DNA from: Hydrolagus colliei
Lineage: Eukaryota
Reading direction: 5' to 3'
Assembly: GCA_035084275.1 (NCBI GenBank)
Contig: CM068760.1
Location: forward strand, 5,084,001 to 5,148,000
DNA length: 64,000 nt
Numbering within the stretch: the stretch's first letter is position 1; every line of letters starts with the position of its first letter. Below, piece after piece: positions 12,225-33,033 of the stretch. The notes below the pieces were generated by a model that was given only the letters and a program-made list of their open reading frames with translations, did not search any database and was not told the DNA's origin. Position numbers and translations under genes: made by a program.

Positions 12225-12581
12225 TGGAGTCCTGTAGCTCAGTGGTTAGAGCACCCGTCTTACAAGCGTGTAGAGCTGTGTTCGAATCCAGACAGGTCAG
12301 GGAGAAACCTTGGGCAAGTTTCCTTACTCCACATACCTAATAATAATCTGTCTAAAGAAACACAATAACAAAATTGGTCATTTCAATCCCTCAAAAAGAA
12401 CACAATAATAAAATTGATCACTTCAATCCAAGACTGTTTGTGGGACACCACTGTGCGCAATTGACTGCAACATTTCGCTCACAAATATACAGTCAATTCA
12501 CTTTACAGTATATTCTGTGAAGCACTTTGAGACGTCTAGAAGAAGCGAAAAGCGCTATACCAAATGCAAGGATTATTATTA
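12225..12581 (+). mobile_element. SINE full length with internal ~40-bp duplication
   Basis: The cacaataa..aaattg.tca.ttcaatcc block is present twice (12356-12430). Confidence 0.9.
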
Positions 12582-13865
12582 TCTCCTGGCACTATTCGAA
12601 AAGAAAAGGGGTGTTTTTCCTGGTGCTCAGGCTAACAATTCCCCCTATAAATACTGTACATATTCAATATTAATTAACTTCATGGCTGTGAGTGGGACAG
12701 TTTCTACACTTTATAGGAAATCCTCCTGACTTGAAGGGTGCGACACCCAATGTAAGAATTATCATTATTAAATATGTCACATTTCAAAGAATATACCGTG
12801 AATTGAATTGACTGTATATTTCGTGGGCAAAAGACGAGGAACCCTTCAAAGAGGCGCATCAAGCCACAGCTTTCCTATTTATGAGCAATGATCACTCAAC
12901 CAGCGTCAGTGCTGGAGAACAGGTGGCTGACTGTGGGGGATTTGAGATAGTAAACCTCTTACTGAGCTGGTTGCAGGCATCAGCAAAACCTTGAATCAAC
13001 TAATTAGTGAAAGTGCTGTGTCTGTAATTTAAGAATGAGTTGACCTTGCTGCGCGTTTTTCAGTTCATCCTTCCGTTCAAAGTTTGCGTTACTGCAGCTT
13101 CCAGATTTTATTCACGAATGAGACACGCTGTTCTGTTTAAAACGGATGATTTTTATGACGGTAATAATGATAATGATAATACTTCCATTTGATATAAATG
13201 GAATATACAATGAAAGAAACATAATAAAAATACAGGGATTTTGTTTGTAATGTCTATTTATAGGGATGCCACATTCTATTTATGTGAATGATCTTCAAAT
13301 TGACATTATGTCCTAACGTTGTGGCTGTCCATTCATTACATTACTAAATTGTATTGATTTTATCAACCGCGTAACAGATGTACACGAAGAAATTCCACCA
13401 AGGTTTAGATTTACTCTTTTTTTTAATGCCATTTTAGAACATACAACATTTGGCAAATGTGGACTTACATACCTTAATTTTGAAGCTGTTTTTTTTTCCT
13501 GTAAGTTTATTTTAAGTGCCATAGAAAACTGACTTGAACGTCGAGGTTGAATTCAATAATTTGCTATATTACAAAAACTTGGAGCTCTAAAATGTTACAT
13601 ACAAAATGTTACGCTTTGCATGTTTTGAGTGGTACTTGAGACGTTCTTGAAGAAGTAATAAGGCGCTATATCAAAATGCAAGGTTTATTATTAGTAGTTA
13701 CATTGTTAAAGTTCCTCATGTGAAATCACCTACACTATACAGTGTGGTCAAAATATTGTAGTCCATCTTGATGTCAAAACACATACACGTCTCATACATG
13801 TCAAAACACATAAACACAAGATTACAGGCCCCCAAATTAATTTATGGAATATTATCACTGATGGA

Positions 13866-14158
13866 TAATAATAATCCTTGCATTTGATATAGCGCTTTTT
13901 ACGTCTTGTAGACGTCTCAAAGTGTTTCACAGAATATACTTGTGGGTGAAATGCAGCCAACTGTGCACAGCAGTGTCCCACAAACAGTCATGGATTCAAA
14001 TGACCAATTTTATTATTGTTTTTTTTTGGAAGGGATTATTATTAAGCGTGCGGAGTAAGGAAACTTGCCCAAGGTTTCGCCCTGACCTGCCTGGATTTGA
14101 ACACAGGTCTCACGCTTGTAAGGCAAGTGCTCTAATCACTGAGCTACAGGACTCTACA
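13866..14158 (-). mobile_element. SINE full length
   Basis: Reverse-complement copy. Confidence 0.9.
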
Positions 14159-14489
14159 TGTGCTATCACATTTTATTTTCAGCCTTTAGGATAAAGCACA
14201 AATCCTAACGTGGATCTTTTATCATATTCGATTATACATTGCGTACAATTACATCTACATTTTATTATTTTTAATTTGATTCATGTATATTAATCTACGG
14301 AATGTTATCCATGGTTAGTATCACTGGACGACTTAATTTCAGGAAGAAATAAACATTTACTGCCCCCAAGATAGACAAGTACAGCTATTTGAAGGGAAAG
14401 ACAATGGGTTAATTCTCTCTATGTTAAATCCCTTTCCAACCCCTTCCATCCTTGTGGTTCGAAAATCCTATTACAAACAGAACTATTGA

Positions 14490-14575
14490 AAACTAATCCT
14501 ATTGTGTCTGTCTTTGAGTCTTGGCAACAGGGATTAAGCTAAACCTGCATAGGGTCACGTTGATTGCTTAATATC
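14490..14575 (+). promoter_or_regulatory. Cluster of CRX/OTX-type homeodomain sites just upstream of the PDE6G ATG exon
   Basis: CTAATCC (14493), overlapping GGATTAAGCT (14531-14540) and GCTTA (14566), all in non-repetitive DNA. Confidence 0.4.
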
Positions 14576-14664
14576 CCTATATGTGTTGCGTACATTAATC
14601 TGATATCGTTGTGTTTCTTTGAAATGTAGCATCTCAGTGAAGCGTGAAACAACCGTGAGCAACC

Positions 14665-14903
14665 ATGACGACCAAAATAGAAATGCAACCCAATTCTGGG
14701 TTGCTCAATGTAGAGATGCAACCCAGTACTGCGATGCTCAACGCAGCCAAGTTGGCCCTGGTCGAGACCAAAACTGTAGGAGAAATTAAGTCTGCAACCA
14801 GGGTAACTGGAGGCCCAGCCACTCCGAGGAAAGGGCCACCAAAATTCAAACAACGGCAAACAAGACAATTCAAAAGCAAGCCACCAAAGAAAGGAGTACA
14901 AGG
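14665..14903 (+). CDS. PDE6G: PDE6G first coding exon
   Basis: ATG in aaccATGa context, polycationic region, donor GG|gtaagc. The start codon is uncertain because in-frame ATGs also occur at 14683, 14716 and 14734. Confidence 0.9.
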
Positions 14904-15726
14904 GTAAGCGGGAGTGCAGGGCTGGGGGTGGGGGGAGGGGTGGGATTGGTGGGGATGGGGGGTGGGGGGTCAGGTGGGGTAACGAGAAGCGCAGTTGGCA
15001 TTGTTGTTTAGAAGCTGGTCGACTGTAAACCAAGGGGGGACAAAGATTTAATGTGTGACCACAAGGCATTTTTTTTAACATATGACCGAGTTGAGATGGA
15101 GTAAAGATAATGTCCCTTGCTTGGCACCTAGAGCTTGCAATGGAAATGTCAACTGCTCTTGCTGAATAAGTTGCATTATTGGGCAACGGTCACACGGGGA
15201 GGGCATATTTGTAACAAGACGAGATGTGCGGTACTGTATTGGGACATTGTGTGTGTGAATGTAGTCATAATGAGGTGAAGAAGGTCCTTTTTTTTTTATC
15301 TGTGTGGTGGTTGGGGTGGGGGGAGCAGAGGAGTGAAGGGTGGTGGGGCGGGGGTGGGTTGGGGAGGGAAACTAGGTTAGAGTCCTGTGAAACCTGCGTT
15401 TGAATCCTGCACATATCATTGAGAAAAAGGTTTTCTCTGTCTCTGTCCACTGAGGTTCCTGTTTGAAATGGGTTTGAGAAGTCAGTTGCTGATGAGCTAA
15501 ATTCCACAACACAAAACTGCACCTAATTTGCGCACCTTGAGTTGGTCTCTAACACAGTTACAGTTTTAATGCAAGGCTGGTAACAGAGAGTAATGGGGGA
15601 TTATTTAGGGCAATGTTACAGTAAGTATAGCCAGTTCAAGTGGTGCTCCATTGACGTGTAGAAACTAACAATTGGGCGAGCTGTTAAAAAACCATATTCA
15701 CTCTTCCCAACAGGTTTGGTGATGAC

Positions 15727-15757
<31 letters not shown>

Positions 15758-15959
15758 TGATGGATACTGCTTGTCATAAAGAGGATTTGTTCTTCGTTGT
15801 TTTCCGGCTCCTGCCTCACGTATGTTAAAAAAAAACGCCTTGTGGTCACACATTAAATCTTTGTCCCCCCCTTGGTTTACAGATATCACTGTCATCTGCC
15901 CCTGGGAAGCCTTCAATCACCTCGAGCTACACGAACTTGCACAGTATGGAATCATTTGA
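14665..15959 (+). CDS. PDE6G: Rod cGMP phosphodiesterase 6 inhibitory gamma subunit, join(14665..14903,15714..15754,15883..15959), 118 aa
   Basis: The spliced translation contains [76 protein letters not shown], the rod P-gamma signature including the AQYGII C-terminus. Introns are GT-AG and exon lengths sum to 357 nt in frame. Confidence 0.95.
15023..15882 (+). repeat. Long-range inverted repeat, arms 15023-15082 and 15821-15882, inside PDE6G introns
   Basis: ctgtaaaccaaggggggacaaagatttaatgtgtgaccacaaggcattttttttaacata is the reverse complement of tatgttaaaaaaaaacgccttgtggtcacacattaaatctttgtcccccccttggtttacag, apart from one mismatch and two single-base homopolymer length differences. Confidence 0.95.
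15714..15754 (+). CDS. PDE6G: PDE6G second coding exon (41 nt)
   Basis: cccaacag|G TTT GGT GAT GAC ATC CCT GGA ATG GAA GGA TTA GGA ACA G|gtatga. Confidence 0.95.
15883..15959 (+). CDS. PDE6G: PDE6G last coding exon
   Basis: gtttacag|AT ATC ACT GTC ATC TGC CCC TGG ... GGA ATC ATT TGA. Confidence 0.95.
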
Positions 15960-16172
15960 AAGTCAGCCACTACCCACGGAATTCTGTGTGCGTTTCCACT
16001 CTGCTCATCCCAAAAAATATTCGTCAAGGAACCATCCCTATATCGCCAATGGCCTTGAGCACAAGGACAACTTTCAAGGCCAAGAAGTCCCATTCACTGC
16101 ATTTGGAAAAGCAAAATAGCAACAAATAAGCCCCACTCCTCTTCCTTCCGCACCCCCCCTACCCCGCTCCGC

Positions 16173-16178
16173 AATAAA
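16173..16178 (+). terminator. Candidate polyadenylation signal of PDE6G
   Basis: AATAAA about 210 nt after the stop codon, followed by T-rich sequence. Confidence 0.5.
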
Positions 16179-16739
16179 AAAATATTTTTAATTCACATTT
16201 CCCTCACAGCTGTATTTACTGCGTAAAAGAGCTGCTCAACTTCAAATGCACACATCAGAATTGTAAGCCGTCCTGTCTTCAACGTGGCCGACCATTTCTC
16301 CGATAACCTCTCGTAGAACAATTTTCAGAGACGTTAGGACGTAAACTGCTGTTACCTGTGGTTACGTTCCAATAATCTCAGTTCTTTTTTTTTAAAAGCA
16401 AGCAAAGATACATATCTCCCTATGCAGGCACGTTCATTTCTGTTCATTGAGATTCTTTAACCGTTGAACTATGTAGAGGAACTATTCCAAGTGTGATTCT
16501 GTGGAGGTGGAATTGATAAATCCCTGCAAATGCTTTCCAAGTGCCTCCTTCTGAACAGGACCTTCACCCAACGCAATGCTGGACTAATCCCAGCTTCTAT
16601 CTAGTTGGAATTTCGCCCACAGTCAATCTGCTTTACAGTGTATTCTGAGAAAAGGTTTTGAGACCTCTCAATCACAAAATATGCCACTGTATCAAATGCA
16701 AGGGTTATTATAAGTTATATCATTTCTTTATCGTGACAT

Positions 16740-17470
16740 TTTTTAACGTTTGACTCTCAGTCAATTTTAATGATCTTAATGATCTTTTAATAATCTACAT
16801 TTATTTTTCTTTTCTGCTTATAAAAGGAACCACTCAGGGATTTTTTTTGCTGTTGTTGTTAAATTGATCTTCTGTGGGGAGCTCGAGATAGGAGAAAGTT
16901 GTTTGTTTCTCGCTGTGTCATGTAGCTGAGTGATGTATCGACAATTCCCTGAGATGTCCTCATTTTAGATCCCTTTTCTCCCATTTACATCTTTCAATTA
17001 GTTCCCAATTCCTTCCTGTCACGTTCCACTTAATCCACAAATGTAGAGTGATTTGTGATAAATCGTTTGAGATCACGCCAGCTTTTTTTTTGTCTTGTAC
17101 GGTCAATCCATTGGTTAACATCACACTAAAACCCCCATGTCACTTTTTAATTCTTCTCTGGCATTTTTATCCAATTTTGTTATGGTTTCGAAACGCAACC
17201 GTTATTTGATGAAATGTCAAGTCACTCCATCACATTGTCTCGCTATCTTGTCTCATCCACATTTCCTGTCTGTCGGGCATTCTTTCTCATCCATTCGCTT
17301 CCTGTCTTCCCCTATTAAATGCACAATTATCGTTATGTTAACTGTTCTTGCCCCCTATTCAGTAATCATTACCTCTACCTATGATCATCCTATTTGCTTG
17401 CTTTCTTTCCGTCAATTTGTAGGGCTTTTTTGTCGCTTTGGGAAAAATTTCCAGGACTAATTGTTGCACT
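16740..17470 (-). mobile_element. Heavily decayed L1/Tx1-like LINE endonuclease remnant
   Basis: The minus strand is A-rich, and a frame with stops reads SWK..PKRQK....RKE..QIG, resembling the start of an L1-clade ORF2 endonuclease. Confidence 0.3.
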
Positions 17471-18106
17471 ATTTTTTTAGAACAACACATAGTGTTGTTC
17501 TAAGCTTTTAAGATTCACATTCCTTGTTCTTAGGTCTTGTTAATTCTTGCTTTCCAATTCCTTTCATTTATCCCCTTTTTGGATTTTTGTAGTTTTCCCC
17601 TTTTTATAGTTTTGGGATTATTTCTTCATCTTTTCCTGGCTGCGAGTTCCAATGAAACCCGTCTTTTTTTTGTTCCTTTTCCCTTTCCTCTCGCTGTCTC
17701 TGCCACCATTTTTGTTCTTTTAATTTATCCATTTGAAAAAAATACTAGAAAGAATAATACTTATTTGTTTGGTAAAAGGTTCCTCTGCATTTCAGGCTTG
17801 TGTCCCTGCATTCTCTTTCTCACTCGGTTTGCTTTAGTATATTTCACGCACCTCTGAAGTCAGGCAGGAGGCACTTCTGTACAAACATCTGCAACGTATT
17901 GCGGGGAATGTTAAAGTGGGACTTAGCTGTTTCTTTGCATTGTTTCCATCCAGAACTTTATCATCTCAAGAAAAGGTTGTTCTCTCTACATTGTACCTAA
18001 TAAAAGCTTTGAAAAATAAAGAAATCAATCCGCAGTTTTGGCTTTCATTTGTAAAAAAAAACAAAAATTGTCTCTTTCATTTCTTTGGACCATTCCTAAC
18101 CCTTCC

Positions 18107-18366
18107 CGGAGTCTTGTAGCTCAGTGGCTAGAGACCTGGGTTTGATGCTAGGCAGGGCGAATTTTTGGACAAGTTTCCTTACACTGCACACGGCTGATAA
18201 TAATCGCTCAAAAAAAATGGTCACTTCAAACCACGGCTGTGCACAATTGGCTTAGGCATTTTTCCCACAAATATACAGTCAATTCACTTTATAACACAGT
18301 ATATTCTGTGAAGCTCTTTGAGACGTCTAGAACATGTGAAAAACGCTGTATCAAATACAAGGATTA
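18107..18366 (+). mobile_element. SINE with small deletions
   Basis: Head, core and tail recognisable. Confidence 0.8.
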
Positions 18367-18369
18367 GTA

Positions 18370-18866
18370 CAGTAAAAGCCTGTTTATCTGTGACCCGATC
18401 AACCGGCACCTAAAAAAAAGGTCTCCATTTGAATAACCGGATCTTAATCGGCACAATCACGGTGGCGCATTTTTTTTCCCTCGTATCAGTATTTTGGAAT
18501 GCTGCTACTCATGCCTGAAGGTGGCACTGCCATTTTTTCCCCTCGCATCGGTATTTTGGCTTGCCGTTAGTAGTGCCTGAAGGTGGTGCTGCCATTTTGT
18601 TCCCTCACTCGGCCATTATAGAAGATAGACTGTACACCTCTACCCCAGCTTCAAACCAGGCATGTACCAGCAAAGGTGATTTTTTGGTGAATAATAAAAG
18701 GTTTGTTATTATCTGTCATTATTTAGTCTATTATTAATATGGTATGTGTTAAAATAAGTATGTGTTAATTTTTTTTGTGTTGGGTTTTCGGCGTCAGATC
18801 CGCCTGAATATTCAGCATGTCATTTAGGCCAGGTCCCGAGGATGCCGGATAAACAGGCTTTTACTG
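18370..18866. mobile_element. Non-autonomous Tc1/mariner (Tigger/pogo-type) DNA transposon (MITE)
   Basis: 19-bp perfect TIR CAGTAAAAGCCTGTTTATC...GATAAACAGGCTTTTACTG flanked by TA on both sides, with an internal ~60-bp tandem repeat at 18461-18610. Confidence 0.88.
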
Positions 18867-19284
18867 TACTACACTAGACGCCCAGTGACTGATTGACTGC
18901 TGGGCCAATGCAGTCACCAACAGAGAGCAATTTGCAATGCTGATGAAATATTGGAGCCGGACGATTGAATCACTTGAAACACCATAAACACCATTGGTGT
19001 GGCACTGAGGAGGGCTGATGACTGATGCAGCGATGATAACGAGGCAGCGATTGGGTTTTCCTGCAAATGACCTCTTACACTGGAGATGAGATCGGCGGCA
19101 TATCTTTATTCAAATAAACCTCTTTTTCAATCTTCTTATCTTTATTGTGCCTCCATTGCGGCATCGTGACTGATTAACATCGATTGAACATTAATGTTAA
19201 TGTCAATCCACGACTGGTTGAGGGGAGAATGCCATGCACAATCAGCTGCCGCGGTTCGCCCACAAATAGTATTCCTCATAATGT

Positions 19285-19900
19285 ATTTATAAAAATGGGT
19301 CCATTATAGGCAGAGACAGGAGGAATTATATTGGAAGATAAAGATATGATAGAGTCCCTAAATAAATACTTTGCTTCTATCTTCGTGTTAGAAGACACAA
19401 AAAGTTTACCGAAAATAGAGATGAACCAAGCGGCTAATGATAGGGAGCAATTTAGGGAAATTTACGTTAGCAAGGAATGGGTGCTAGGGAAATTGTTGGC
19501 ATTAAAAAGTGACAAGTCCCCTGGACCTGATGGTTTGCATCCTAGGGTTTTAAAAGAGGTGATCCATGAGATAGTGGAGGCCTTGTGTCTAATAAGAGCA
19601 CAAAAATTAGGAGCAGGAGTATGCTATTCAGTCCCTCAAGCCTGCCCCACCATTCAATAAGATCACAGCTGATCTTCTATTCTAATTCCACCTACCTGCC
19701 TTATTCCCATATCCCTTAATCTTCCCAAATCCTTTGGATTCTGGAACTGTCCCCATAGATTGGAAGGTCGCAAATGTCACACCACTATTTAAGAAGGGTG
19801 GGAGAGAAAAGATGGGGAATTATAGACCAGTTAGTCTGACATTGAAGGTAGGGAAAATTCTAGAATCCTTAATTAAGGATGTCGCAGTGGGATACTTATT
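19285..19900 (+). mobile_element. CR1-clade LINE ORF2 fragment (pre-RT/RT start), interrupted by an inverted CR1 3' end at ~19593-19720
   Basis: KSDKSPGPDGLHPRVLKE and DWKVANVTPLFKKGGREKMGNYRPVSLT motifs. Confidence 0.9.
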
Positions 19901-22900
19901 GGAGTCAGTCCCACCTCCCCCTGTTATCCCGGGGACCGTCCGGGTGGTGGAATCAGTCCTACCCCTCCCTGCAAACAGTCACTACATTGAATGTAGTCAT
20001 TATCCACGATCCGGGAAGAGCTCAGAGACGCCGCAAAACGCAAAGACTTTCCTTTCTCCTTTTTTGTTCTTCTCCTGGCTTCAACTTTTCAATGTGGATT
20101 TGATGTGCTAACTCTTGTCTCTCTCTTGACTTGCCTTCTGTGTCTGTGATTACTAACATGGCTGACAGGGGGCTGCTGACTTGCTTCCAAGTTCTTTCTG
20201 ACGTTCTCGCAAGGAAATGAAACACATGTCAAGTGTCGAAATATTTATGGCAAATGGCAGTTTTCTGATAGATTTAGCATGTAGATTTACAAATCCCTTT
20301 CCCAGAGTCATGTATTTCTAAATCAAATGTTATTAGATTTGGTTTAGCAAATCCTTACCTATTTATGACTCTTTACTTCAGAAATGTGAAGATATTCAAA
20401 CTCAGCGTTCCAGTATATTCAATCAACATTATATAATCTTGATTTATCAAATATGTTTCTCCAAAGCCTCAGACAATTCAATCATGATTTAAGTTTCCAT
20501 TTTTTGAACTTTTTTTTATATCTCAGAGTTGATTAAATCCTTTCTTTAGATAAGTAAACACACTCATACTTTAATAAATCCTTATATTAATGTCCAGATT
20601 CAGTAAATTATCCTGTCAGGATATAGGTACACTAAGTTCTGAATTTTGCATTCGAATTTATAAATCCTCATTTAAATTCACAGGAATGCTTAAATCTCCA
20701 TAATTCCTAATATTAGTGGATTGTATCCGATATGGTTTGATCTGTGTGGATGGGACCGTCCACTCAAAGATTTAATTTAAAACAACATAAAAAAGCACAA
20801 AGAAGCCAGCAATTTCTCTAAAGATTCTTAGCTGTTATTTTTCTTCCCCCACTCCACCCCCAACCCCACCCCCACACCGTAATATCCCCACTTTTTTAAA
20901 ATATTGCATTACGTTATTTATTTCCTCAGTAACCGTCTCTCACACAGAGCAAAGGAAAGCTGCAGCGCTCAAACTGAACCCATCAGTGCAGTCCTTCAGC
21001 GGTCTCAGAGGCAACAGGTCGTGATTTAATGTAGGGCGTCCAGGGTGACTGCTGGCAGTGCCAGACTTGGACGGCTAAATGCAACGGGTAACTTTTAGCA
21101 AATGGACGCCGGCCGGGGTTTTTCGGGGGGTTTCGAGAAGCGTTTGTTTTTTTCGAGTCGAGAAAAAAGTGTTTTGTTCTCATTCCAGCTGCAAAACACA
21201 CACTGTTGATCCGCTTTCCAAACTATTACTGCCTTTGAGAAAAAGAACTTTTTTGGACGGCTCGAAGACACGATAAGACACTACATCAAATGAAAAGGAA
21301 GTTTATTATTATTATTATTTATGAAGCATTCCCTCCTCCGAGGCTCAGTTCTCGAAGGAAAATGCCCCAAATTTAAAAAAAAAAAAATTATTCTAATGAA
21401 TAGGGCCTGCCTAAGACACTAGCCAATTATACCCGTTTGATGCTCGAGGAGTCATTAGAGTGAGCAGTGTTGATTAAAATTTAGCCTGACCAAAAAGAAG
21501 AAACTATTGAACAGAACCTGGAACGCACCGCTCAGTCAGTGCCAAGACGCCCATTTACTAAATTAGGATGTATCACTCGGGGGACAAAATAGGAATCTCT
21601 AAACTCATTCGGTTTCCATAAAATATTCAGCATTCCAGTGGGCTCATAGATACAGTTTTTTGTTTTCCTCACACTGATGCTCTTTCTTGTTTCTTAAGTA
21701 AAGTACAAATACGGCCCCTTTTCTTCTACAATACAATATTATTATTTGTGTGCTAATGTCGCACGCATCTCCACTCTCTGCTCTCTAAAGCCGCTACTAC
21801 TTTGACTGCGTTTTCAGTCACCTTCCTCTCTCCCTATCCTCCAACCCTGCTTTGGCCCCTACATCATCTCTGTGAAGCTCTTTGAAATATTACCCGCTAA
21901 AAGTAGTAACTTGGTGTCACAAAAGACCCAGTGATAGGATTGCAGGCAAGACAAAGCGAAAGAGTTCAACTGCATTGCTTCAGGGCTTATAATAGAATTT
22001 GGCATCCTTGGAAATAAAGACACACAGTACAGCGTAGCTCCACCCTAACTCCTAAACGGTACGCTATGTACATTCCCTTGACTTTACATGCTTTCTCCGC
22101 TTCCATCTCAGTCTAGGAACCAAGACAGTTAGTTCTGAGTTAAGAGTGGGATAAAATAAGTGCTGTTTGATTAGAAACAGTCTCCCGGTGTCCATCCTAT
22201 CAGGGGACTATGAAATTAGAACAGCCGGCGATACCGTCTCAAAATGATGGTACGCATTCATTCCAGAACAAACTACAGTAAATGCAAACCAGACCGAGCG
22301 ACAGCGAGGCCATTACAGGCAGGAAGCGCAACAGATTCACAGCAGAATCGTGCGTAGCCCAGGGGAGGAAGGTCGAGACAGGATTCGAAATGCAGTAAAA
22401 GGCAGGAAGCGGTAATCGAACAAGGGGAAAAGGAGGTCAACGGCGCGAATGGCAAAAAAAAAAACGAGGTCAAGGGGAAGAGAAGGAAAGAACAGAACGT
22501 CCGAGAAAAGACATTTCTCATCCTGCAGAGGCCGAGGCTTCCTCTAAAGGATTAATAATAAATTGGTCACTTCAACCCACAACTGTTTGTGGGACACCGC
22601 TGTAGTGCCATTTGGCTGCCGCCTTTCGCCCACACAACACGCATTCAATTCACTTTACGGTGTATTCTGTGATAGTGCTTTGAGACATCTCAAAGTCATG
22701 ATAAGGCGCTGTATGAAACGCAAGAAATATTAGTGTTATGGCGAGAAGGAAATTCACTCGAGGTTTGTGAGTGAAGACATCCAGTGGAGTACAGAAGAGG
22801 CTTTTTGCAAACCATGCGGCAGACATTATCCATCTGCTTTGTCTTCCACCCTCTTGGCAGGCGCTTGACATGTTGTGTCACCATCTTTCCTGTGTGCTTT

Positions 22901-24215
22901 AATTCCTATTTTGCTTTTGAAAAAGATTCAAGCAGAATAAGGTTTGGCCGAGTGGAATTTCAAGTTGCAGGCATCGAACGAAGGAATCGAACTTAGGAAT
23001 TTCACCCAAGTATCGACTTAGCAAAATTGCTGAATTCCATTTTAAGTTTGCAGGTTTTGTTTCTGCGAGTCCCAGAAACGAAACCTATCAAAGTTGGCGT
23101 GTGCTAATTTGCGCGATGATTTCCAATGTCACTTTCCTGGTTTGATTTTGTGTTACGCTAAGTCAACAGAGTAAAATTCAAGTGTTGTTTCTACCCCCTT
23201 GTTCCCAAAACATGTACAGTCACAACCCATTACATTCCAGGTGAACGCTTCAGGTTATTTGAGATGTCTCTAGAACAAGCTCTCTCGCTGGCTTGCCATT
23301 GTCTCTCTCTGTGAATCAAGGCTCAGGGTCGATTCCACAGCATTGCTTCTGGCAAGACTTATTTTTTAGGTACGTAATCACTTGATTATCTGTCGAACAC
23401 AGTTTCCTGCGACCGTGTACTCTGCAACGAGTCTTTCCTTCCTTTCCCCTGACTCTGTTATGAAACTTCTCAATGATAAAAGAGAGGATTCTCTTTTTGG
23501 TTCAAGGTGCTTTCTTCTGAAGCGTATAATTAATCTTTTTTTTCATGTGTGTTTACCTGGACTGCAAGGCATTAAGACATCAAGGACTGTAGTGGTGGGG
23601 TAGTGGGGTGTGGGTGGGTGGGGGAAGGAAATACAAAATAGTGCTGGAAAATTACAATGTGAAGGGTGTTTATTAAAGTTTTGATAATTGGTTGTGAGGA
23701 CGTTAGCAATAAGTGAGGTAAAATAGGAACATTAACCATCAAAAGACTGTAGTTTACATTTTACAGATGTTTAACATCCTGAGTGTGTCTGGCTGTTCAC
23801 AGGGGAGATGAAATTGCAGTATATTTATCATCAATTATTATTTCTTCAGGAAAACAAAAATATAAGTTCAGCAGCACAGAAAACACAGGCTGCAATATTC
23901 AAATTCCTGTTTGATTGTGACTGAATTCTGTATGAATTTTAATTACAGCTTAGTTACAATATGTTATACGTGAGATTCCTCCGAATATATTCTGCACTGT
24001 ATATTTCTTTAGTCTCATTTTTACTATTTTTTTTCCCTAAAACGATAGACTTCAGCTGAAAAAAAAGCAGCTGTAACTAGGTATCCCTAGAGGCTGTTCA
24101 AACTCCATTGCAAGCATTCCCTCCATGTTCAGGCTTGTTACATTCTTAAAGCTTGCTGCATGATCACAGGACAAATTCGAGGCTTGGGATTACCTGTTGT
24201 TTTGCCTTCCTCTTT

Positions 24216-24440
24216 GCCTGGCTGAATTGGTATAACTCACACGCGGGAGTCAGTTAGTAGTTGTGAGTTCAAGCCCCATATCAAATCTGTCAACTCATAA
24301 TCTAGTTGACACTCTAGTTGACAGAGCAGCGCTGGGGGGTAAGCATTGGACTGTTGTAGATGCTGTCCTTCAGATAAGATGTTAGAAAAGGGTGTCCAGT
24401 CTATCTGTTCAAGTGGATGTTAAATCTCCCCACAACATGT
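24216..24440 (+). mobile_element. Older Deu-SINE fragment ~100 nt upstream of the ARPC1 ATG
   Basis: gactgttgtagatgctgtccttcagataagatgttagaaaaggg...ctgttcaagtggatgttaaa matches the Deu-SINE body. Confidence 0.6.
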
Positions 24441-24544
24441 ATGAATCATATGTTATATATGACCTATTCCGTGACCTGTGTTTTGTGTGTTCCTGGTGAG
24501 TGCAGGGAGCTGACAGGCAGCTCTGGGCTCACGTATGCGCAGAT

Positions 24545-24608
24545 ATGTCCCTGTACAGTTTTGGAGTGGAGCCCATAACATGTCATGCGTGGAACAAAGA
24601 CCGAACGC
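24545..24608 (+). CDS. ARPC1: ARPC1 coding exon 1
   Basis: [21 protein letters not shown], donor C|gtgagt. Confidence 0.9.
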
Positions 24609-27600
24609 GTGAGTAAAGAGTAAGCGTAACACTGTACCAACTCCCAACAGTGATCCTCTTGAGGTGCGCGTTTAGTGTGTAGTATCTTGGCGTCCAATTT
24701 GCAAGTTAGGTTAACAATGCCGTCTCTACGTTCGCCTCCAAGTTGCTCACCATTCCTGAGTTGGACATCACTACTATTCTTTAAAGTTTATCATATGAAG
24801 CGCTTGGAGATCACGTCTCGAAGATGTGATAAGGCGCTGTATCAAATACAATTATTATTATTATCAAATGTCAACACTCATTAATCGTCAATGAGTCGAT
24901 ATCCTAGAATTCCCTCACCCCCTACCCAACGCAACACCGTCATGGAATATTGCTTGCTCTTAGGTACGGTGATGGGTTTCTGCGCGTGTCAGACACCCGG
25001 CTGATCTCCCAAATAAAATGAGACTTTTGTTTTTCTTCACCTCCCCCCCAAAAAAAGAAATCGCCATCAACTCAAACAGTCACAAGGTTTTTATTTATCA
25101 GAAGAAAGGGAACGAGTGGAAGAAAATTCACGAACTGGCTGAGCATAGCGGTCATGTCACAGGTAAGTGGTTCAGAATCTATGACCCAATGTCAGTCAGT
25201 AAGATCCAATATATCTGCATCAGAACATACATTGTGAGTTCAAAGTCTCGGCCAAAAGCGCCCAAAGATATCCCTCAAAACTGCTGAGACTATGTGACAC
25301 TTGGCGGACTTTTTCACTCTTTTAACGGTGACGTCTTACTGTAACACAGATCCCGCAGATGCCATCCCATGTGAAGGGCGTTATATAACTACAAGTTGAT
25401 GTTGCTGCTATTGTTTCCTTTACCCACTAAATAAAACAATACAATCTATTCAAAGCCCTCCATGGTGACATCTGCGACCACCAAACCCCCTGCTAACCTG
25501 CCCCCTCCCTGGCTTCTTTCAAATTCCGCCTCTTCGATGGTCCCATCAGTCACCTCAAATTCCCACCTTTCCCTCCCTCCCTCCCTCCTTCCACCCTCCC
25601 CGACCCAGACCCCAGCTCGGGTCTGAAACAATGACTGTCCAGGGACCTCCTCCTGACGTGAAAGGCGCTGTACAAGTATCATTTTGTTGTTCTTATATCT
25701 ACTCCGATGGTTTCAAATAGCAAAGATTTTTCCACTACAACTTCTAGTGGTCAAATCCCTTCATGAAGGCTCGGTCAGAAGATCTCTAACTTCCGATAAT
25801 CACGGCTTTTCAACTGCCCATGCGTACGCACATTGTATAGACAATGGGTCTCAAGGGTCTATTTTTCAAACAACTGCAGGGATAGACTGGGCCTCGAGCA
25901 CCAATCGGATTGTGACGTGTGCCGTGGACCGGAACGCATATGTCTGGTCTCTAAAGGACGGGGTGTGGAAACCAACCTTGGTCCTGCTGCGTATCAACCG
26001 GGCGGCCACCTGTGTGAGGTGGTCACCGCTGGAGAACAAGTTCGCTGTGGGAAGTGGAGCCAGATCTGTCTCGGTGTGTTACTTTGATAAGGAAAATGAC
26101 TGGTGAGTCCAGTGGTTTTTAGTTTATCTCACCAACCACACAGCAACCACAGTTTATAATATTAATCCTTGTATTGGATGTAGTGCCTTATCCTGTCATC
26201 CTAGACGTCTCAAAGCGCTTCGCAGAATATACTGTAAAGCAAATTGACTGTATATGTTGTGGGAGAGACACGGCAGCCAATTGCACACAGCAATGGCCCA
26301 CAAACAGTCGTGGACTGAGTGACTGGGAGTTCCTGACATAGACACAAATCACCAAGCAAGGAATGAAAAAAAATTGATCTCAACTTAAAGAGTGATTCCG
26401 ATAACCAGACATGGATACTTAATCATGTTCCTACAACACCAGCAAATTACATTGCAGCATTTGTAACCTATAACAAAACCAAAGCCTCTGTAAAGTACCA
26501 TCGAGCCAATCAAATAGACTGTAATATCCTTTGATTAACTGTAATCAAAGTAATAGATTATCTCAAAATATACAGCTGCTGCTCTTAGCATAAGAGTGTC
26601 TTGTTTTCTGCAGGTGGCTGAGTAAACACATCAAGAAATCCATCAGGTCAACTGTGCTTACACTGGATTGGCACCCAAACAATATCATTCTAGGCGTTGG
26701 CTCATGTGATTTCAAGTGCAGGTAGGAACACAACAATGCAAATAAGAGGTACGGTTTGCTGCTTGTTCAATGCTGGGTCTCTCCTTTCTGTCTCCCCAAA
26801 GTTCAGCTAACTCAACTCAGCACAGCCCAAATCTGTCCACCGTGGCCTAAAGTAAAGCGTTTCCAATAAGGAATCCCAGTTATGTGACTCTTTGCAGTGA
26901 ATGAAAATAGTTCACAATGACCCATGGTAATGACTCTCTCTGATCCAGCCCCATCTCGTTCTGTGGGTCGATTGGAAGTTCTTCCAAATTCTACCAAAAT
27001 AAATCTCGTTAAGACGTAAAACTGTAATAATAATAATCCTTACATTTGATATTCATCACGTCTTTGTGACGTCTCAAAGCGCTTCGCAGAATAAACTGTA
27101 AAGTGGATCGACTGCGTATTTGTGGGACAAACACGGCAGCCAATTGTGCACAGCAAATAAGCTTGCGATCTGACTACACTGCCTCTTTGCTTACTGTGTG
27201 CTAGGGTGTTCTCGGCCTACGTCAAAGAGATTGAAGAGAAGCCTGCCCCGACAGCCTGGGGAACTCGGATGCTGTTTGGGGAGCTTCTGTTTGAGCAGAA
27301 AGAGTGTGGGGGGTGGCTGCACGCCGTGTGTTTCTCCCCCAGTGGGAACTGCCTTGCCTGGGTCAGTCACGACAGCACAATATCAGTGGTGGATGCCAGC
27401 AAAAACAAGGCGTGAGTATCTCTGTAACTCACAATCTGCTCAGGAAAAACTACTACTATTAATAATAATAATACAAAGCTTTGGAACTCCCTCTCTCAAC
27501 TGCTTTGCCTCACCCCCCATTTGATATAAGATCTTATCACATCGGCAACAGATCTCAAAGCGCTTCACCAAAATGACAGTACAGTACTGTAAAGTGGAAT

Positions 27601-30140
27601 TATTCTATTTTGTAGATGATTTCAACTAGCAACCTGCCCGCTGTAAAAAACACTCTCCCTCCCACACACACATCTAAGACACACAAACAAAGATATCCGC
27701 AGACACATACACACAAATACAGAATATAAAAGCGTCCACACATACACACACGTGCTTGCACATTTCCCAGGCATGGTTGAGCGGGAAGGTGTTGATCTGA
27801 AGATGGTGGGCAAAGAGGGTGGGGGAACGAGATTGAAACATGTGGAAAACATCCCACAAACAATGAAATGAAGGATCATTTGAAGATATCACCCATTGTT
27901 ATCAACTACTAGTTGAAGGCCACGGTGAAATGTATGTCTAATTCTGCTTCTGTCTCTCTGCTTTGGACACCTTGCCAGAGTGACCCAACTGAAGACATCA
28001 TTCCTCCCTCTGCTCAGTGTGCTGTTCCTTAGCGAGCGACACATCGTGGCAGCAGTAAGTGTTGAATCAAAGTCGGCCTCTGAAATTGGGAAACGTGTGC
28101 AGTCGAAGGCACCAGTGAACATAATGCAAAACTGCATCAATATCAGAGCCAGAGTAGTTCATTAACATTGGCGAAATTCTGCCTCTAAAAGGGGAAACTG
28201 AGGATATCTGTAAATCAGGCTTTGCCCGCAGGTTGCTTTCAATAACAAATTATATTTGTATAAGAATAATTATAATAATAATCCTTGCATTTGATATAGC
28301 GTTTTGCATGTCTTCTAGAATATGCTTCGCAGAATATGCTGTAAAATGAATTGACTGTGTATTTGTGGGCGAAACGCACAGTATAGTGCCTGCCTTGCAT
28401 GTCAGCAGATGCCAGGGCGCTCGACAGTGAGATCTTATCCACAGTTACCTTTTCCGTTTTCAGGGCCACGACTCCTGCCCCTTCCTCTTTGCGTACACCG
28501 ATCAAGGTAACTTGAGCTTCGTGACCAAAATGGATGTCCCAAAGCAAAGCTCCCAGCAGAGCCTGTCAGCCAGGCAGCTCTTCCGCAACTTGGACAAGAA
28601 TGCCATGGTCAAACAGGAGGACACGTCTCTGGAAACCCTGCACAAGAACACCATCAGGCGAGGAGGGGGTTTACCATATGCACTAAGGATGTAGCGAAGT
28701 GCATTTAAACATTTGTTGCATTTGCACAGCGCCCTTCAAGTTGGGCAACACAGTTGGAGAGGGCGCGATATGGTGGGTTATACGAAGGGAGTTTCAGGAT
28801 CCGAAGGAGGTAACGAGAGGGTGAGGGTCTCCCAGCAAGCCTGAGTTGGCGGAGTGAGCAAGCAGAGGAGTAGGGAAGCAGGAGATCAGAGAGGACAAGG
28901 AGGTTTTAATGTGTAGAAGGGGTTACCGAGCTCCTGAGGCAAGGTGGTTAGAGCACTCGCCTTACAAGCGTGAGACCTGTGTTCGAATCCAGGCAGGTTG
29001 GGGCAAAACCCTGGGCAAGTATCGTTACTCCACACACACGCCTAATAATAATCCATCCAAAAATAACCTATCAAAAAAATTGCTCATTTCAATCCACGAC
29101 TGTTTTGTGGCGACACTGCTGTGCGCAATTGGCTGCCGCATTTCGCCCACAAATATACAGTCAATTCACTTTACAGTATATTCTGTGAAGCGCTTTGAGA
29201 CGTCGATAAGATGTGAGAAGCGCTATATCGAATGAAAGGATTATTATTAGTATTATTGTTAATATAAGTGAGGATAAGGACTTTGAGATTAGTCCAGTGG
29301 TTCCAGACATGGAACAAATGGAGCGCAGCTTTGAGTGGGAATTTAGGGAAGGAAGAAATATGCCATCTGGTGGTCTATTGAGTAAAAGCACAGCCCCCTT
29401 TACACGCACAAGGGGCAGTGATGGTTATCCTGCTATTGGTGGGCAAGAAAATAATCATGGAAATAACAAAATAGTGTAAGATTGATGCCTTTGATCGAGA
29501 GATATTCAGAGGGAAGAAACATTGATTTTGTTGGCCTATCATAAAGGTTGCCTGGGATCCGATTGCATTGTGCTGAATTAGCCACCGAAAGGCAACCTCA
29601 CAGTTCCCGCTCAACAGTCAAAGAGTTTACGAACCGTTATTAATAATTGTATTAAGGCAGAATGCTTTTATTATAATATTGCAAAAAATATTTTGTCCAC
29701 AAAATATACACAGTTTACAATTTAGTCCATGAAGCGCTTTGAGACTTCTCGACAACTTGATAAGTGCTGCATCAAATGCAAGGATTATTATTATATAACT
29801 CTGTTTTTTCTATCACTTTTCTAACTATGTGTACTGTTGATGTTTGCTCCAGTCAGCTTTCGATCGTCACGGGGGACAAGGCTAATGTGACCACCTTCAG
29901 CAGTACTGGGTTTGATGGTGCGTTAGTTACCTGGGACTTCAGGGTAAGCATTTACTGATTGCAAATGTTGCGTTATCTCTCTTGCTATGGGACAAACACA
30001 GCCTCCCGGGCACTTACCATTCTTAGCATCAGTACGGCTTGTAGGTACGTACTTCATTTCATGGTCAACCTTTCAATAATCCTTCTTGTCGGTAGCGAGA
30101 AATACTTGTGCTAATTTTCTTTCAGGCTCCCAGTGTTTAA
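24545..30140 (+). CDS. ARPC1: Actin-related protein 2/3 complex subunit 1 (p40) family WD40 protein, join(24545..24608,25058..25162,25880..26102,26614..26721,27205..27411,27979..28054,28464..28657,29853..29943,30126..30140), ~360 aa
   Basis: The translation [22 protein letters not shown]...[61 protein letters not shown]...[24 protein letters not shown]...GHDSCPFLF...[13 protein letters not shown] matches the ARPC1A/ARPC1B family. Exon phases are consistent. The paralog identity is not resolved. Confidence 0.93.
25058..25162 (+). CDS. ARPC1: ARPC1 coding exon 2
   Basis: (Q)[34 protein letters not shown], donor G|gtaagt. Confidence 0.9.
25450..25692 (+). mobile_element. L2-tail element (second family; ...ctcgggtctgaaac.gtgactg...tcctcctgacgtgaaaggcgct...(TTG)n)
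   Basis: The same block recurs on the minus strand at 38715-38830 and 61747-61960. Confidence 0.7.
25880..26102 (+). CDS. ARPC1: ARPC1 coding exon 3
   Basis: [14 protein letters not shown]...YFDKENDW, ctgcag| and |gtgagt. Confidence 0.95.
26614..26721 (+). CDS. ARPC1: ARPC1 coding exon 4
   Basis: [36 protein letters not shown]. Confidence 0.95.
27205..27411 (+). CDS. ARPC1: ARPC1 coding exon 5
   Basis: [19 protein letters not shown]...[19 protein letters not shown]. Confidence 0.95.
27979..28054 (+). CDS. ARPC1: ARPC1 coding exon 6
   Basis: [25 protein letters not shown], donor |gtaagt. Confidence 0.93.
28464..28657 (+). CDS. ARPC1: ARPC1 coding exon 7 (ends at a GC donor)
   Basis: [64 protein letters not shown], then AG|gcgagg. 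Confidence 0.88.
28928..29256 (+). mobile_element. SINE full length in ARPC1 intron 7
   Basis: Head to tail. Confidence 0.9.
29853..29943 (+). CDS. ARPC1: ARPC1 coding exon 8
   Basis: [30 protein letters not shown], donor |gtaagc. Confidence 0.92.
30126..30140 (+). CDS. ARPC1: ARPC1 probable last coding exon (APSV*)
   Basis: Branch-point-like gctaat plus tttctttcag acceptor. It is too short to confirm by homology, and an alternative AG at 30133 would give CLKAHP*. Confidence 0.55.
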   Translation, partial: APSV

Positions 30141-31907
30141 AAGCACATCCTTGAAGGCCATGCACAGGCTGACGCACAAATTTGGATCTTCGAATCGAAT
30201 AACACAAGAGAATTTGAGCACACAATGGTGCATCGCTCAGTCAAGGAATTTTGTTCAAGACAAAGGCATCTCTTTTTGTGGCTGAAGTGATTGAACTCCT
30301 GAAAGAGCAAAGGCATTGATATTATTTGCGGTGTGAATACTGGGTGGAGGGTACTGATAATTGTTCTGTTCACTGTAGAAAATGCTCGTGTAATACAACA
30401 GAGAGTTTCAGATCATCTTTTCCTTTCTCTATCCACCTGTAGGGACTGAAATCTGCTAACACATTACGTTGGTACAGTGCTTTTGACCCGCAAGCTAGTT
30501 TTGTACGTGATGATTCTAAATGCATTAAAGTACGCTACTGCTTTAAATCGAGTCCATTTAACTTGGGATGGAAAAAATGGAACTCCATCCCAAAGTAGGT
30601 GGGGAGGGGGTGGAGTGGGGGGTGGGGTTGTGGGTGGGCGGGGTAGGCTGGTGGGGGGGAAGACGAGAATCCTATTGAAACATTTGATCACTTGGTGGCA
30701 GTGTTTCCCTATCTGAGCCTTTCTCATCGACTTTTGGAAAACTTTGCACCTACGTGGAGCCCTGTGTTTTTTTTAAAAAAGATTATTTATTTGCATGGAT
30801 GGAAAGAGGTCAACCGTCATTGAAGTTTATAATATTAACAGGAAATTGGTTACTTATGCATTAACCCTTCCAGTGTAACCCTACCAAAGGATTTCACTCC
30901 GCGCCTGAAATGGAAAGTGTGAATTGTTGCGCTATGAGCTATAAATTGTATGATATGAGCTTGAATTGTATTTTACATTATTTACTTTTTTTTTAAAAAA
31001 AGAAAAATACTGTACATTGAAATTCTAGGACAAGAAGCAGTCAGTATAATCTAATCGGAGTCGGTCTGTACGCTCTGTCTTAGGAATACTTTATAACATC
31101 CGGGGTAACTGAGTTAGTTGGTTTCTGACCAGAAGATTTGGGGTTCTGTTCTCAAGGGCTCAATTCAGCCCCTCACTCCTTCTACTTCAATACAGCAACT
31201 GCCATTTCATCTGTGCATTATAGTAGTAATAATAATAATCCTTCCATTTGATATAGAGCCTTATCGCACAGTACAAAACGCAGTCAAAGTACTTCACAGA
31301 ATATACTGCCAGGTGAATCGGCTCTATGTCTTGTGAGCAGCTCTTTGGATAATTCAACAATGATTCGCCCCATTCTCCAAGATTTAAAGCAACGACATCA
31401 GCAAGATAAGGCCCTATGATCAGTGGGTACCTATTTGCGTCATCGGGTTCACTGCTAGTGTTAATAATGAGGCTATTGTGTTTGCTGCCGTGTGGCTTTC
31501 TGCCAACCCCATCAGGTGAAGCTGGCACGAAAATGGATGCGCTGTACACACTGGACACAAGCTCCCTTTAAGATCGACAGAAGCCCAGGCTCCCAAATTA
31601 ACGCAGGTGAATCCAAGAGTCTGCACAAACTTTCTGTACAACCCGGAAATTGAAGATGGTAAGATCCCAGGGCTGAAAACCTATGTAAAGTTCCCATGCC
31701 CCCTGGACTTCCTTCTTGTGGATTTGTGGTGGGCAGGCATGGGAAGGGAGAGGTCAATGTGCGAACTGAACAGCCGTAACTATGGCAATGCTTGAGACAC
31801 ACAGGATGTGCTTCCCATTTCACCATTAACAGTTGTTCGAATGAACCGAAAGGCCGTTAAAACTGAAACAAACTAAAGATGACTTTATTTGTCACGTTTC
31901 AAAGATC

Positions 31908-31908
<1 letters not shown>

Positions 31909-31934
<26 letters not shown>
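31909..31934. repeat. (CA)n microsatellite
   Basis: Direct reading. Confidence 0.9.
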
Positions 31935-31939
<5 letters not shown>

Positions 31940-32244
31940 AAAATGGCTTGAATCCCACTTTTCAAGACTGACAAGTCTGTCTATTGTGTTCCTGGAGCTA
32001 TTGTCATGTGAACCGTGGCTGTCAGTGGCAGCCTTGTATCTAATGCAATCTCCCTAGCTCGGGGAGGCTGATGCAAATTTTGCTGCCTCATTCAAGGTCA
32101 TTTAACCCAGCACGTAGCAGGAATCAAATCAGGCTGCCATCTGGTCTGTGATGCATCATTGCTTTAATTCACTCGGATCAGGGGAGAGCGGAGGGGTAGA
32201 GAGTGGGGTATGTCGTTCGTTCTTACAAACGTTTAAGAAACACT

Positions 32245-33002: not shown

Positions 33003-33033
<31 letters not shown>

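What the first reader, a model, noticed from the sequence alone, without database searches (positions are those of the whole stretch)
15023..15882. Antisense copy of a 3' splice site inside PDE6G: candidate long-range RNA duplex controlling splicing
Seen: 15023-15082, in the intron after the first coding exon, is the reverse complement of 15821-15882, the last ~60 nt of the next intron. That stretch covers the branch region, the pyrimidine tract and the acceptor. The match has one mismatch and two 1-nt homopolymer differences, and it stops exactly at the AG of the last-exon acceptor. Neither arm resembles any repeat family elsewhere in the window. Inference: in the pre-mRNA the arms form a ~60-bp duplex that hides the final acceptor and loops out ~740 nt containing the 41-nt exon. 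This could act as a splicing-order lock, where the last acceptor is usable only after the upstream intron carrying the antisense arm is excised, which would protect a frame-shifting microexon from being skipped. It could instead be a switch promoting skipping or intron retention. The exact stop at AG could also mean the arm arose from a reverse-transcribed excised intron.
Basis: partly seen in the sequence, partly recalled or inferred. Interest (0 to 1): 0.85.

Follow-up and report, generated by a model that had tools for sequence, protein, structure and literature searches.

The report
Young inverted repeat flanking PDE6G microexon
A cartilaginous-fish rod phototransduction gene carries a recent 60-base inverted copy of the end of its last intron inside the preceding intron; the two copies could pair in the RNA and hide a splice site, but they look like a tolerated mutation, not an evolved switch.

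Summary
Arm 15023-15082 is the reverse complement of 15821-15882, with 59 of 60 aligned bases identical and two 1-nt gaps. The match ends exactly at the AG of the last acceptor of a PDE6-gamma gene.

It is not an artefact and not a repeat family. An independent sample of the same organism has both arms with their own flanks. The shared 31-mers sit at 2.0x single-copy depth in both samples. The window holds no other copy.

One relative (about 3% diverged) shows arm 1 and another (about 2%) shows arm 2. The arms change as fast as their flanks: 3/111 against 12/487, p=0.75. No compensatory change could be scored.

In silico the arms form a 59-bp duplex of -94 kcal/mol, and the AG is paired with P>0.9. 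No RNA run was found, so any effect on splicing is untested.

Best reading: a young, lineage-restricted inverted micro-duplication that is tolerated, not an evolved splicing lock. Which arm is the copy is unresolved.

The scan holds one unchecked first-reader note of an acceptor inside a 19-bp inverted repeat on another piece of this genome.

The parts
14665..14903 (+). Exon A of the PDE6-gamma gene (coding part). The ORF is open from ATG 14665, with further in-frame ATGs at 14716 and 14734. It ends in phase 2 before GT 14904.
   Evidence: Translation. Pfam PF04868 PDE6_gamma, E 9.2e-15, on 14716-14901. Homologs.
14904..15713 (+). Intron 1 (810 nt), GT...AG, with a CTAAC branch-like motif about 45 nt before its AG. 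It carries arm 1.
   Evidence: Read. Exon borders fixed by the reading frame and by homology.
15023..15082 (+). Arm 1: the antisense copy of the last 62 nt of intron 2.
   Evidence: Present with its own flanks in samples X1 and X4 and in relative X6.
15714..15754 (+). Exon B, the 41-nt frame-shifting microexon (encodes ..[13 protein letters not shown]..). It lies in the 738-nt loop between the arms.
   Evidence: Read. The peptide matches the homologs listed.
15755..15882 (+). Intron 2 (128 nt). There is no AG between 15783 and the acceptor AG at 15881-15882.
   Evidence: AG dinucleotides only at 15780, 15782 and 15881.
15784..15819 (+). Pyrimidine-rich tract (27 of 36 bases) just upstream of arm 2. 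It ends in CTCAC (15815-15819), the only usable yUnAy branch-like motif of intron 2, with its A at 15818.
   Evidence: A15818 reads G in relative X7.
15821..15882 (+). Arm 2: the 3' half of intron 2, holding the A9 run, the distal pyrimidine tract (15857-15880) and the acceptor AG.
   Evidence: Present in X1, X4 and X7.
15883..15959 (+). Coding part of exon C (last exon), stop TGA at 15957-15959. The 3' UTR runs on to an AATAAA at 16173.
   Evidence: Pfam PF04868, E 3.1e-12.

Best explanation
What it is: a young, two-copy inverted micro-duplication inside the rod PDE6-gamma gene of a cartilaginous fish (apparently a chimaera). One DNA event placed a reverse-complement copy of about 60 nt some 740 nt away, in the neighbouring intron. 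The event could have been a template switch during replication or a templated patch at a repaired break. It happened before the split from two close relatives.

Which arm is the copy is open:
(a) Arm 2 is ancestral and arm 1 is its copy.
(b) Arm 1 is ancestral, and its inverted copy landed at the very end of a formerly 66-nt-class intron 2, behind an older pyrimidine tract. The copy then supplied (or sat just before) the AG that is used now.

At the RNA level (inferred, not shown): arm 2 is transcribed only 108-169 nt after the acceptor of intron 1, so intron 1 is almost surely still present when arm 2 appears. A 59-bp duplex can then form that covers the pyrimidine tract and AG of intron 2 and loops out the 41-nt exon. 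The expected effect is obstructive: slower removal of intron 2, some skipping of the exon, and A-to-I editing of the arms. Cells would have to resolve the duplex with helicases or RNA-binding proteins.

The arms evolve like neutral intron sequence. I therefore read the structure as a tolerated by-product and not as an evolved splicing controller.
For: Real, and in two copies:
- X1 (possible source sample) and X4 (another sample and study, same organism) each give contigs 14600-15063, 15038-15866 and 15841-16300. These break exactly at the shared 31-mers, and each arm is joined to its own flanks.
- Depth at 15867 minus the single-copy contig is 39.0 against about 19.4 in X1, and 97.5 against about 47.4 in X4. 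That is 2.0-2.1x (my arithmetic).
- The window has no other copy, and the 34-mer has 0 hits in metagenome contigs.

Young, and shared by relatives:
- The arms differ by 1 substitution and 2 indels.
- X6 (organism B; 12 differences and 3 gaps in 350 nt) holds arm 1 from 15034 on. X7 (17 differences in 945 nt over five contigs) holds all of arm 2.

No sign of constraint:
- Substitutions are 3/111 in the arms and 12/487 in the flanks, Fisher p = 0.75.
- X4 has a 1-nt shorter T run in arm 1.

Duplex potential.

Published rules, from passages read in PMC8052449: in human genes complementary pairs that loop out exons are depleted, looped-out exons are included less, complementary regions are depleted at active splice sites, and they are enriched in A-to-I editing.

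One-step origin of inverted copies by template switching, with patterns of up to 59 bp: passages read in PMC8794818.
Against: - No outgroup lacking an arm was seen, so 'young' rests on arm similarity and on relatives only 2-3% diverged.
- Each relative shows only one arm, and the holes prove nothing. Co-occurrence outside organism A is therefore inferred.
- The neutrality test has very few changes (3 in the arms) and little power.
- A DNA-only event does not explain why one end of the copy is exactly the last base of the intron, or why the other end lies 1-3 nt after the only consensus branch motif.
- I found no microhomology at the left junction (read by eye).
- No RNA data exist here, so a real and even useful effect on splicing is not excluded.
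Confidence: 0.6

Rival explanations
1. Evolved splicing device. The duplex is kept by selection as an order lock or switch that governs use of the last acceptor, or inclusion of the 41-nt exon.
For: - A strong predicted duplex sits over an active 3' splice site and around a frame-shifting exon.
- It persists in two relatives.
- Both changes in X7's arm 2 are C>T opposite G, so they would keep G-U pairs if arm 1 is unchanged there.
[quoted passage not shown] Splicing here therefore matters.
Against: - The arms diverge as fast as the flanks.
- G15065>T in X6 would break a G-C pair unless it is compensated.
- Homopolymer lengths differ between the arms and vary within the species.
- The structure is young, and no RNA evidence exists.
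- Excision of intron 1 would not release a -94 kcal/mol duplex (inference).
- Such configurations are depleted in human genes.
Confidence: 0.12
2. Origin variant: arm 2 is the insertion. An inverted copy of intron-1 sequence landed at the 3' end of an originally about 66-nt intron 2, and the first AG downstream became or stayed the acceptor.
For: - A 27/36-pyrimidine tract (15784-15819) lies directly upstream of arm 2, where an older polypyrimidine tract and acceptor would sit.
- Arm 2 has no internal AG, true of 1087 of 20000 composition shuffles. That is what a surviving insertion ahead of an acceptor needs.
Against: - The match includes the AG itself (CT at 15023-15024). The insert must then have brought the AG to the exact exon border, or else the 2-nt match is a 1/16 coincidence.
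- No target-site duplication was seen (read by eye).
- No outgroup was available.
Confidence: 0.25
3. RNA-templated origin: arm 1 is a cDNA patch copied from the 3' tail of the excised intron-2 lariat and inserted in antisense at a break in intron 1.
For: - The copy starts at the very last nucleotide of the intron.
- Its other end (15821) is 3 nt after A15818 of CTCAC, the only usable yUnAy motif in the intron.
- If TG at 15083-15084 is read as a decayed CG, the homology reaches 15819, the base right after that A.
- RNA-derived patches without target-site duplication or poly(A) are described in humans as class 2 templated insertions (passages read in PMC5110952).
Against: - The branch point is only predicted, and A15818 is G in X7.
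- The event needs germline expression of a photoreceptor gene.
- A source 740 nt away is what local DNA template switching predicts.
- The exact stop at the AG is the reason this locus was flagged, so it carries little weight.
- I know of no documented case of a lariat-tail insertion (recalled; not searched specifically).
Confidence: 0.07
4. Assembly artefact, or a piece of a dispersed repeat or MITE.
For: The window is full of inverted pairs, 53 of at least 35 nt within 3 kb. Several overlap tRNA-like SINE heads.
Against: - An independent sample reproduces both arms.
- The shared 31-mers are at 2x single-copy depth.
- The arms match no other sequence in the window.
- The loop holds a conserved coding exon.
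- No target-site duplication was seen.
Confidence: 0.02

Closest known systems
Long-range complementary regions in pre-mRNA (PCCRs; Kalmykova et al. 2021, PMC8052449)
   Same: Two intronic segments of one pre-mRNA are complementary over a long distance. They loop out an exon and overlap a splice site. The expected consequences are lower inclusion of the looped exon, obstruction of the splice site and ADAR editing.
   Different: PCCRs are defined by conservation and usually have 10-30 bp. This pair is near-perfect, 59 bp, young, and shows no constraint. It sits on an active constitutive acceptor and loops out a constitutive exon, the configuration that the catalogue finds depleted.
Intronic inverted repeats that drive exon circularisation (Liang & Wilusz 2014, PMC4201285)
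   Same: Inverted repeats of at least 30-40 nt lie in the two introns that flank an exon (abstract).
   Different: The looped exon is 41 nt. In that study exons of 400 nt or less circularised poorly or not at all (passage). Arm 2 also covers the downstream intron's acceptor instead of lying away from the splice sites. No back-splice data exist here.
Template-switch mutations that create hairpin arms in one step (Mönttinen & Löytynoja 2022, PMC8794818)
   Same: A reverse-complement copy of nearby sequence appears as a single event and creates perfect pairing potential. Patterns of up to 59 bp are reported.
   Different: Those cases are mostly short-range stems within one RNA hairpin. Here the arms are 738 nt apart and lie in two different introns. 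The ancestral state has not been seen.
Class 2 templated sequence insertions (RNA-derived patches at repaired breaks; PMC5110952)
   Same: A short templated insert without target-site duplication or poly(A). One end coincides with an RNA-processing boundary.
   Different: Known donors are distant loci and mostly spliced cDNA or LINE-1 fragments. Here the donor would be an intron tail from the same gene, and the RNA origin is unproven.

Membership tests
PDE6 gamma subunit gene (Pfam PF04868) | Exon products match the PDE6_gamma profile above the curated cut-off. | tested here: met
   exon A scores 55 bits and exon C 46.9 bits, against a cut-off of 25. Exons were searched separately and no joined model was used.
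Conserved long-range pre-mRNA structure (PCCR type) | Complementary intronic segments within one pre-mRNA, predicted to pair. | tested here: met
Conserved long-range pre-mRNA structure (PCCR type) | Both segments conserved across species, with compensatory substitutions. | tested here: inconclusive
   X6 shows only arm 1 and X7 only arm 2. No pair could be scored in one relative. The arms' substitution rate equals that of the flanks.
Conserved long-range pre-mRNA structure (PCCR type) | A measured effect on splicing. | not testable with these tools
   No RNA run holds the locus.
circRNA-promoting flanking inverted repeats | Inverted repeats of at least 30-40 nt in the introns on both sides of the exon. 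| tested here: met
   the criterion comes from the abstract.
circRNA-promoting flanking inverted repeats | An exon long enough to circularise, and back-splice junctions observed. | tested here: not met
   The exon is 41 nt, and exons of 400 nt or less circularise poorly. Back-splice reads are not testable.
Template-switch / templated inverted insertion | A near-identical reverse-complement copy of nearby single-copy sequence, two copies in all. | tested here: met
   (2x depth).
Template-switch / templated inverted insertion | An ancestral state without the copy in an outgroup. | not testable with these tools
Transposon / MITE with terminal inverted repeats | Many copies in the genome and a target-site duplication. 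| tested here: not met
   Two copies only. No flanking direct repeat adjoins the arms. A conserved exon lies inside.

The most novel reading that the evidence does not exclude
Arm 1 is a germline fossil of reverse transcription of an excised intron lariat. A cDNA would have been primed at the intron's terminal G, stopped at the branch, and been used in antisense as a patch in the neighbouring intron. Its two ends would then mark the 3' end (15882) and the branch point (A15818) of intron 2. As a side effect the insert created a 59-bp duplex that now masks that intron's own acceptor.
Probability: 0.07. Interest if true: 0.7.

Novelty: new member of a known kind. Interest (0 to 1): 0.35.

Why it matters
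PDE6-gamma is a short, very highly expressed photoreceptor gene. Mis-splicing around its 41-nt penultimate exon shifts the frame into the 3' UTR and causes retinitis pigmentosa in humans (PMC7392665, passages read).

Here nature has placed a near-perfect 59-bp duplex over the last acceptor and around that exon. Human genes statistically avoid this configuration (PMC8052449, passages read). If the gene still works normally, the locus is a natural test of how well the nucleus neutralises a strong long-range duplex over an essential splice site. If splicing is altered, it is a clean one-mutation example of structure-driven change in splicing.

As it stands the evidence points to a tolerated accident, so the value is moderate.

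Tried and rejected
- Repeat family or MITE: rejected. blastn of 14900-16000 against the window found only the pair. The 34-mer gave 2 hits in the window. The shared 31-mers are at 2x depth. A metagenome scan gave 0 hits.
- Assembly artefact: rejected by the independent sample X4.
- Known RNA family in or near the arms: none. An Rfam scan of the whole window at gathering threshold returned only 9 tRNA-like hits, none within 14154-33592.
- Orthologous loci from sharks, rays or Callorhinchus: I searched exon A's peptide and listed seven proteins. The question of which arm is ancestral stays open.
- RNA evidence: the one run search found 11 runs, none on record as RNA. Splicing order, skipping, retention, editing and back-splicing could not be examined.
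- Open alternative frames of the last exon (78 and 81 codons) as a sign of a coding 3' UTR: not significant. 598 and 540 of 5000 shuffles reach the observed lengths.
- circRNA reading: set aside because the exon is 41 nt.
- Microhomology or target-site duplication at the arm junctions: none seen by eye.
- Earlier notes near this place: none.
They may hold Pde6g exon-skipping values.

Full report
OBSERVATION

The stretch read holds the three coding exons of a PDE6-gamma gene on the + strand.
- Exon A has an ORF open from ATG 14665 and ends at 14903.
- Intron 1 is 14904-15713 (810 nt).
- Exon B is 15714-15754 (41 nt).
- Intron 2 is 15755-15882 (128 nt).
- Exon C is coding from 15883 to the stop at 15957-15959.

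Searched separately, exon A and exon C match Pfam PF04868 with 55 and 46.9 bits against a cut-off of 25. I made no joined model.

A gapped alignment places 15023-15082 against the reverse complement of 15821-15882. It has 60 columns, 59 identical, one mismatch and two single-base gaps in homopolymer runs. The match ends at C15023 / G15882, the last base of intron 2, and the next bases do not match.

The 34-nt exact core occurs twice in the window, and none of 100 shuffles gave a match. blastn of 14900-16000 against the window finds no other similarity of either arm beyond 12-14-nt words.

IS IT REAL DNA, AND HOW MANY COPIES?

The single run search listed 11 runs in five studies, none on record as RNA. 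I laid four of them on 14600-16300 at 80% likeness: X1 (possible source sample), X4 (another sample and study, same organism code), X6 (organism B) and X7 (no organism label). All are Logan contigs.

X1 and X4 each give three contigs: 14600-15063, 15038-15866 and 15841-16300. A k=31 graph must produce exactly this if the 34-nt core is present twice in opposite orientation, with each copy joined to its own flanks. X4 differs from the window by only two substitutions and a 1-nt shorter T run inside arm 1. So the repeat is not an assembly artefact.

At 15867 the depth is 56.9 in X1 and 145.8 in X4. Subtracting the single-copy contig (17.9 and 48.3) leaves 39.0 and 97.5 for the shared core. That is 2.0-2.1 times the single-copy level (about 19.4 and 47.4). 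The genome therefore holds two copies and no more, and the 60-mer is not a dispersed repeat. An exact scan of metagenome contigs found nothing.

The window itself is rich in inverted pairs, 53 of at least 35 nt within 3 kb. Several of these overlap tRNA-like SINE heads (9 Rfam tRNA hits). The arms share nothing with them.

RELATIVES

X6 (organism B) has a 354-nt contig over 15034-15383 with 12 differences and 3 gaps. It thus holds arm 1 from 15034 on, with G15065>T and A15068 deleted. That contig ends at 15034, the first base of the shared core. This looks like a graph branch and hints that arm 2 exists there too, but at 5.6x depth this is only a hint. X6 has no contig over 15683-16300.

X7 has a 252-nt contig over 15660-15907. 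It holds all of arm 2, with C15867>T, C15871>T and one extra A in the A run, plus A15818>G just upstream. It has nothing over 14780-15291. Over five contigs X7 differs at 17 of 945 positions.

Each arm is thus seen in one close relative, and no relative shows both. The tool's own text says that holes prove nothing.

Counting substitutions gives 3 in 111 arm positions against 12 in 487 flank positions, Fisher p = 0.75. The result is the same if the exons are removed from the flanks. The numbers are small, but there is no sign that the arms are protected. No compensatory pair could be scored. The two C>T changes would keep G-U pairs, and the G>T change would break a pair (pair map).

More distant orthologs could not be fetched. 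Earlier notes of the scan call this genome a chimaera. I did not verify that beyond these protein hits.

RNA STRUCTURE

The two arms alone give a 59-bp duplex of -94.3 kcal/mol at 37 C and -132 kcal/mol at 10 C. In a fold of 15000-15900 the arms pair in both the MFE and the centroid structure, with z = -6.5 and 0 of 20 shuffles as stable.

In a partition-function fold of 14850-15960:
- arm-2 bases pair with arm 1 with mean probability 0.95;
- the acceptor A and G have 0.98 and 0.91;
- forcing arm 1 single-stranded costs 69 kcal/mol.

These are equilibrium predictions for naked RNA.

HOW IT MOST LIKELY WORKS

The thermodynamic potential is shown. The rest is inferred.

Arm 2 begins 108 nt after the acceptor of intron 1. 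At ordinary Pol II speeds (general knowledge) it appears seconds later, before intron 1 can be removed, so the duplex has the opportunity to form. It would cover the distal pyrimidine tract and AG of intron 2 and place the 41-nt exon in a 738-nt loop.

From passages I read in PMC8052449, human complementary pairs that loop out exons are depleted. Looped exons are included less, complementary regions are depleted at active splice sites, and they avoid branch points. They are enriched in A-to-I editing. The expected effect here is therefore obstructive, not helpful.

A 59-bp duplex would hold the excised lariat on the transcript until a helicase, editing or decay removes it. Circularisation of the exon is unlikely, because exons of 400 nt or less circularise poorly (PMC4201285, passage).

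Because this is the inhibitory subunit of rod PDE6, strong loss of splicing should be harmful. Mis-splicing at this exon causes human retinitis pigmentosa (PMC7392665, passages). Persistence of the repeat in at least two individuals and in close relatives therefore suggests that the cell resolves the duplex well enough. I commit to 'tolerated young inverted micro-duplication with at most a mild obstructive effect' at 0.6, and give an evolved control role 0.12.

ORIGIN

Three versions fit the data.

(a) Arm 1 is a DNA copy of arm 2, made by template switching or a templated patch. One-step inverted copies of up to 59 bp are documented (PMC8794818, passages).

(b) Arm 2 is the copy, inserted at the end of a once shorter intron 2. 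In favour:
- The 36 nt just upstream of arm 2 are 27/36 pyrimidine, like an older polypyrimidine tract.
- Arm 2 has no internal AG (5.4% of composition shuffles), which a surviving insertion ahead of an acceptor needs.

(c) Arm 1 is a cDNA of the lariat tail of intron 2.
- In favour: the copy starts at the intron's last base. Its other end is 3 nt after A15818 of CTCAC, the only usable yUnAy motif in the intron. If TG at 15083-15084 is a decayed CG, that distance falls to 1 nt. RNA-derived patches without target-site duplication or poly(A) are known (PMC5110952, passages).
- Against: the branch point is only predicted, and A15818 is G in X7. A photoreceptor gene would have to be expressed in the germline. 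The stop at the AG is the very reason the locus was flagged.

I found no microhomology or target-site duplication at the junctions (by eye). An outgroup would settle this.

COMPARISON AND NOVELTY

The locus works like a long-range intronic complementary pair. By origin it is most like a template-switch or templated-insertion mutation. It fails the conservation criterion that defines catalogued functional pairs (inconclusive to negative here), and it fails the exon-length expectation for circRNA drivers. It is a new member of known kinds, not a new kind.

Its unusual points are the strength of the duplex, its position on an active constitutive acceptor of an essential, highly expressed gene, and the coincidence of both ends with intron landmarks.

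One unchecked first-reader note reports a splice acceptor inside a 19-bp inverted repeat on another piece of this genome. I did not test it.

LIMITS

- There are no RNA data.
- Only contigs were laid, so there is no read-level view of allele frequencies.
- No outgroup was available.
- The divergence counts are small.
- Paper supplements were closed.

Noticed in passing
window 14678-14741: An in-frame 33-nt tandem duplication (1.9 copies, 83% matches) lies in the variable N-terminal coding part of exon A, giving [11 protein letters not shown] / [11 protein letters not shown]. With ATG 14665 the three coding exons add up to 118 codons, against 107 aa in elasmobranch PDE6G, which is exactly 11 aa more. 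Relative X7 matches 14600-14779 without a difference, so it has the duplication too.
   Followed up: partly
window 14905-14985 and 15300-15370: G-run tracts (GGGGTG-like) sit directly after the 5' splice site of intron 1 and in mid-intron. Many unrelated contigs pile up on 15300-15370, to a depth of 521 in X6, so this is a common low-complexity motif in these genomes.
   Followed up: no
window 12228-12583 and 13864-14153: Two tRNA-derived SINE copies lie in opposite orientation, forming inverted pairs of 77-90 nt at 84-90% with Rfam tRNA hits at 12228-12300 (+) and 14082-14153 (-). They end about 500 nt upstream of the PDE6G start codon. Seven more tRNA-like SINE heads lie elsewhere in the window.
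   Followed up: partly
window about 15821-15841, run X4 only: In X4 an extra contig of single-copy depth (about 50) matches about 21 nt at the start of arm 2. It then runs on for at least 255 unlike letters after 15841. X1 shows no such contig. It may be a chance A-run match or a third partial copy that is polymorphic in the species. Unexplained.
   Followed up: no
window 15883-16127: Both non-coding frames of the last exon stay open for 78 and 81 codons into the 3' UTR. The second is the frame that skipping of the 41-nt exon would use. This is not significant: 598 and 540 of 5000 shuffles of the UTR reach the observed lengths.
   Followed up: yes
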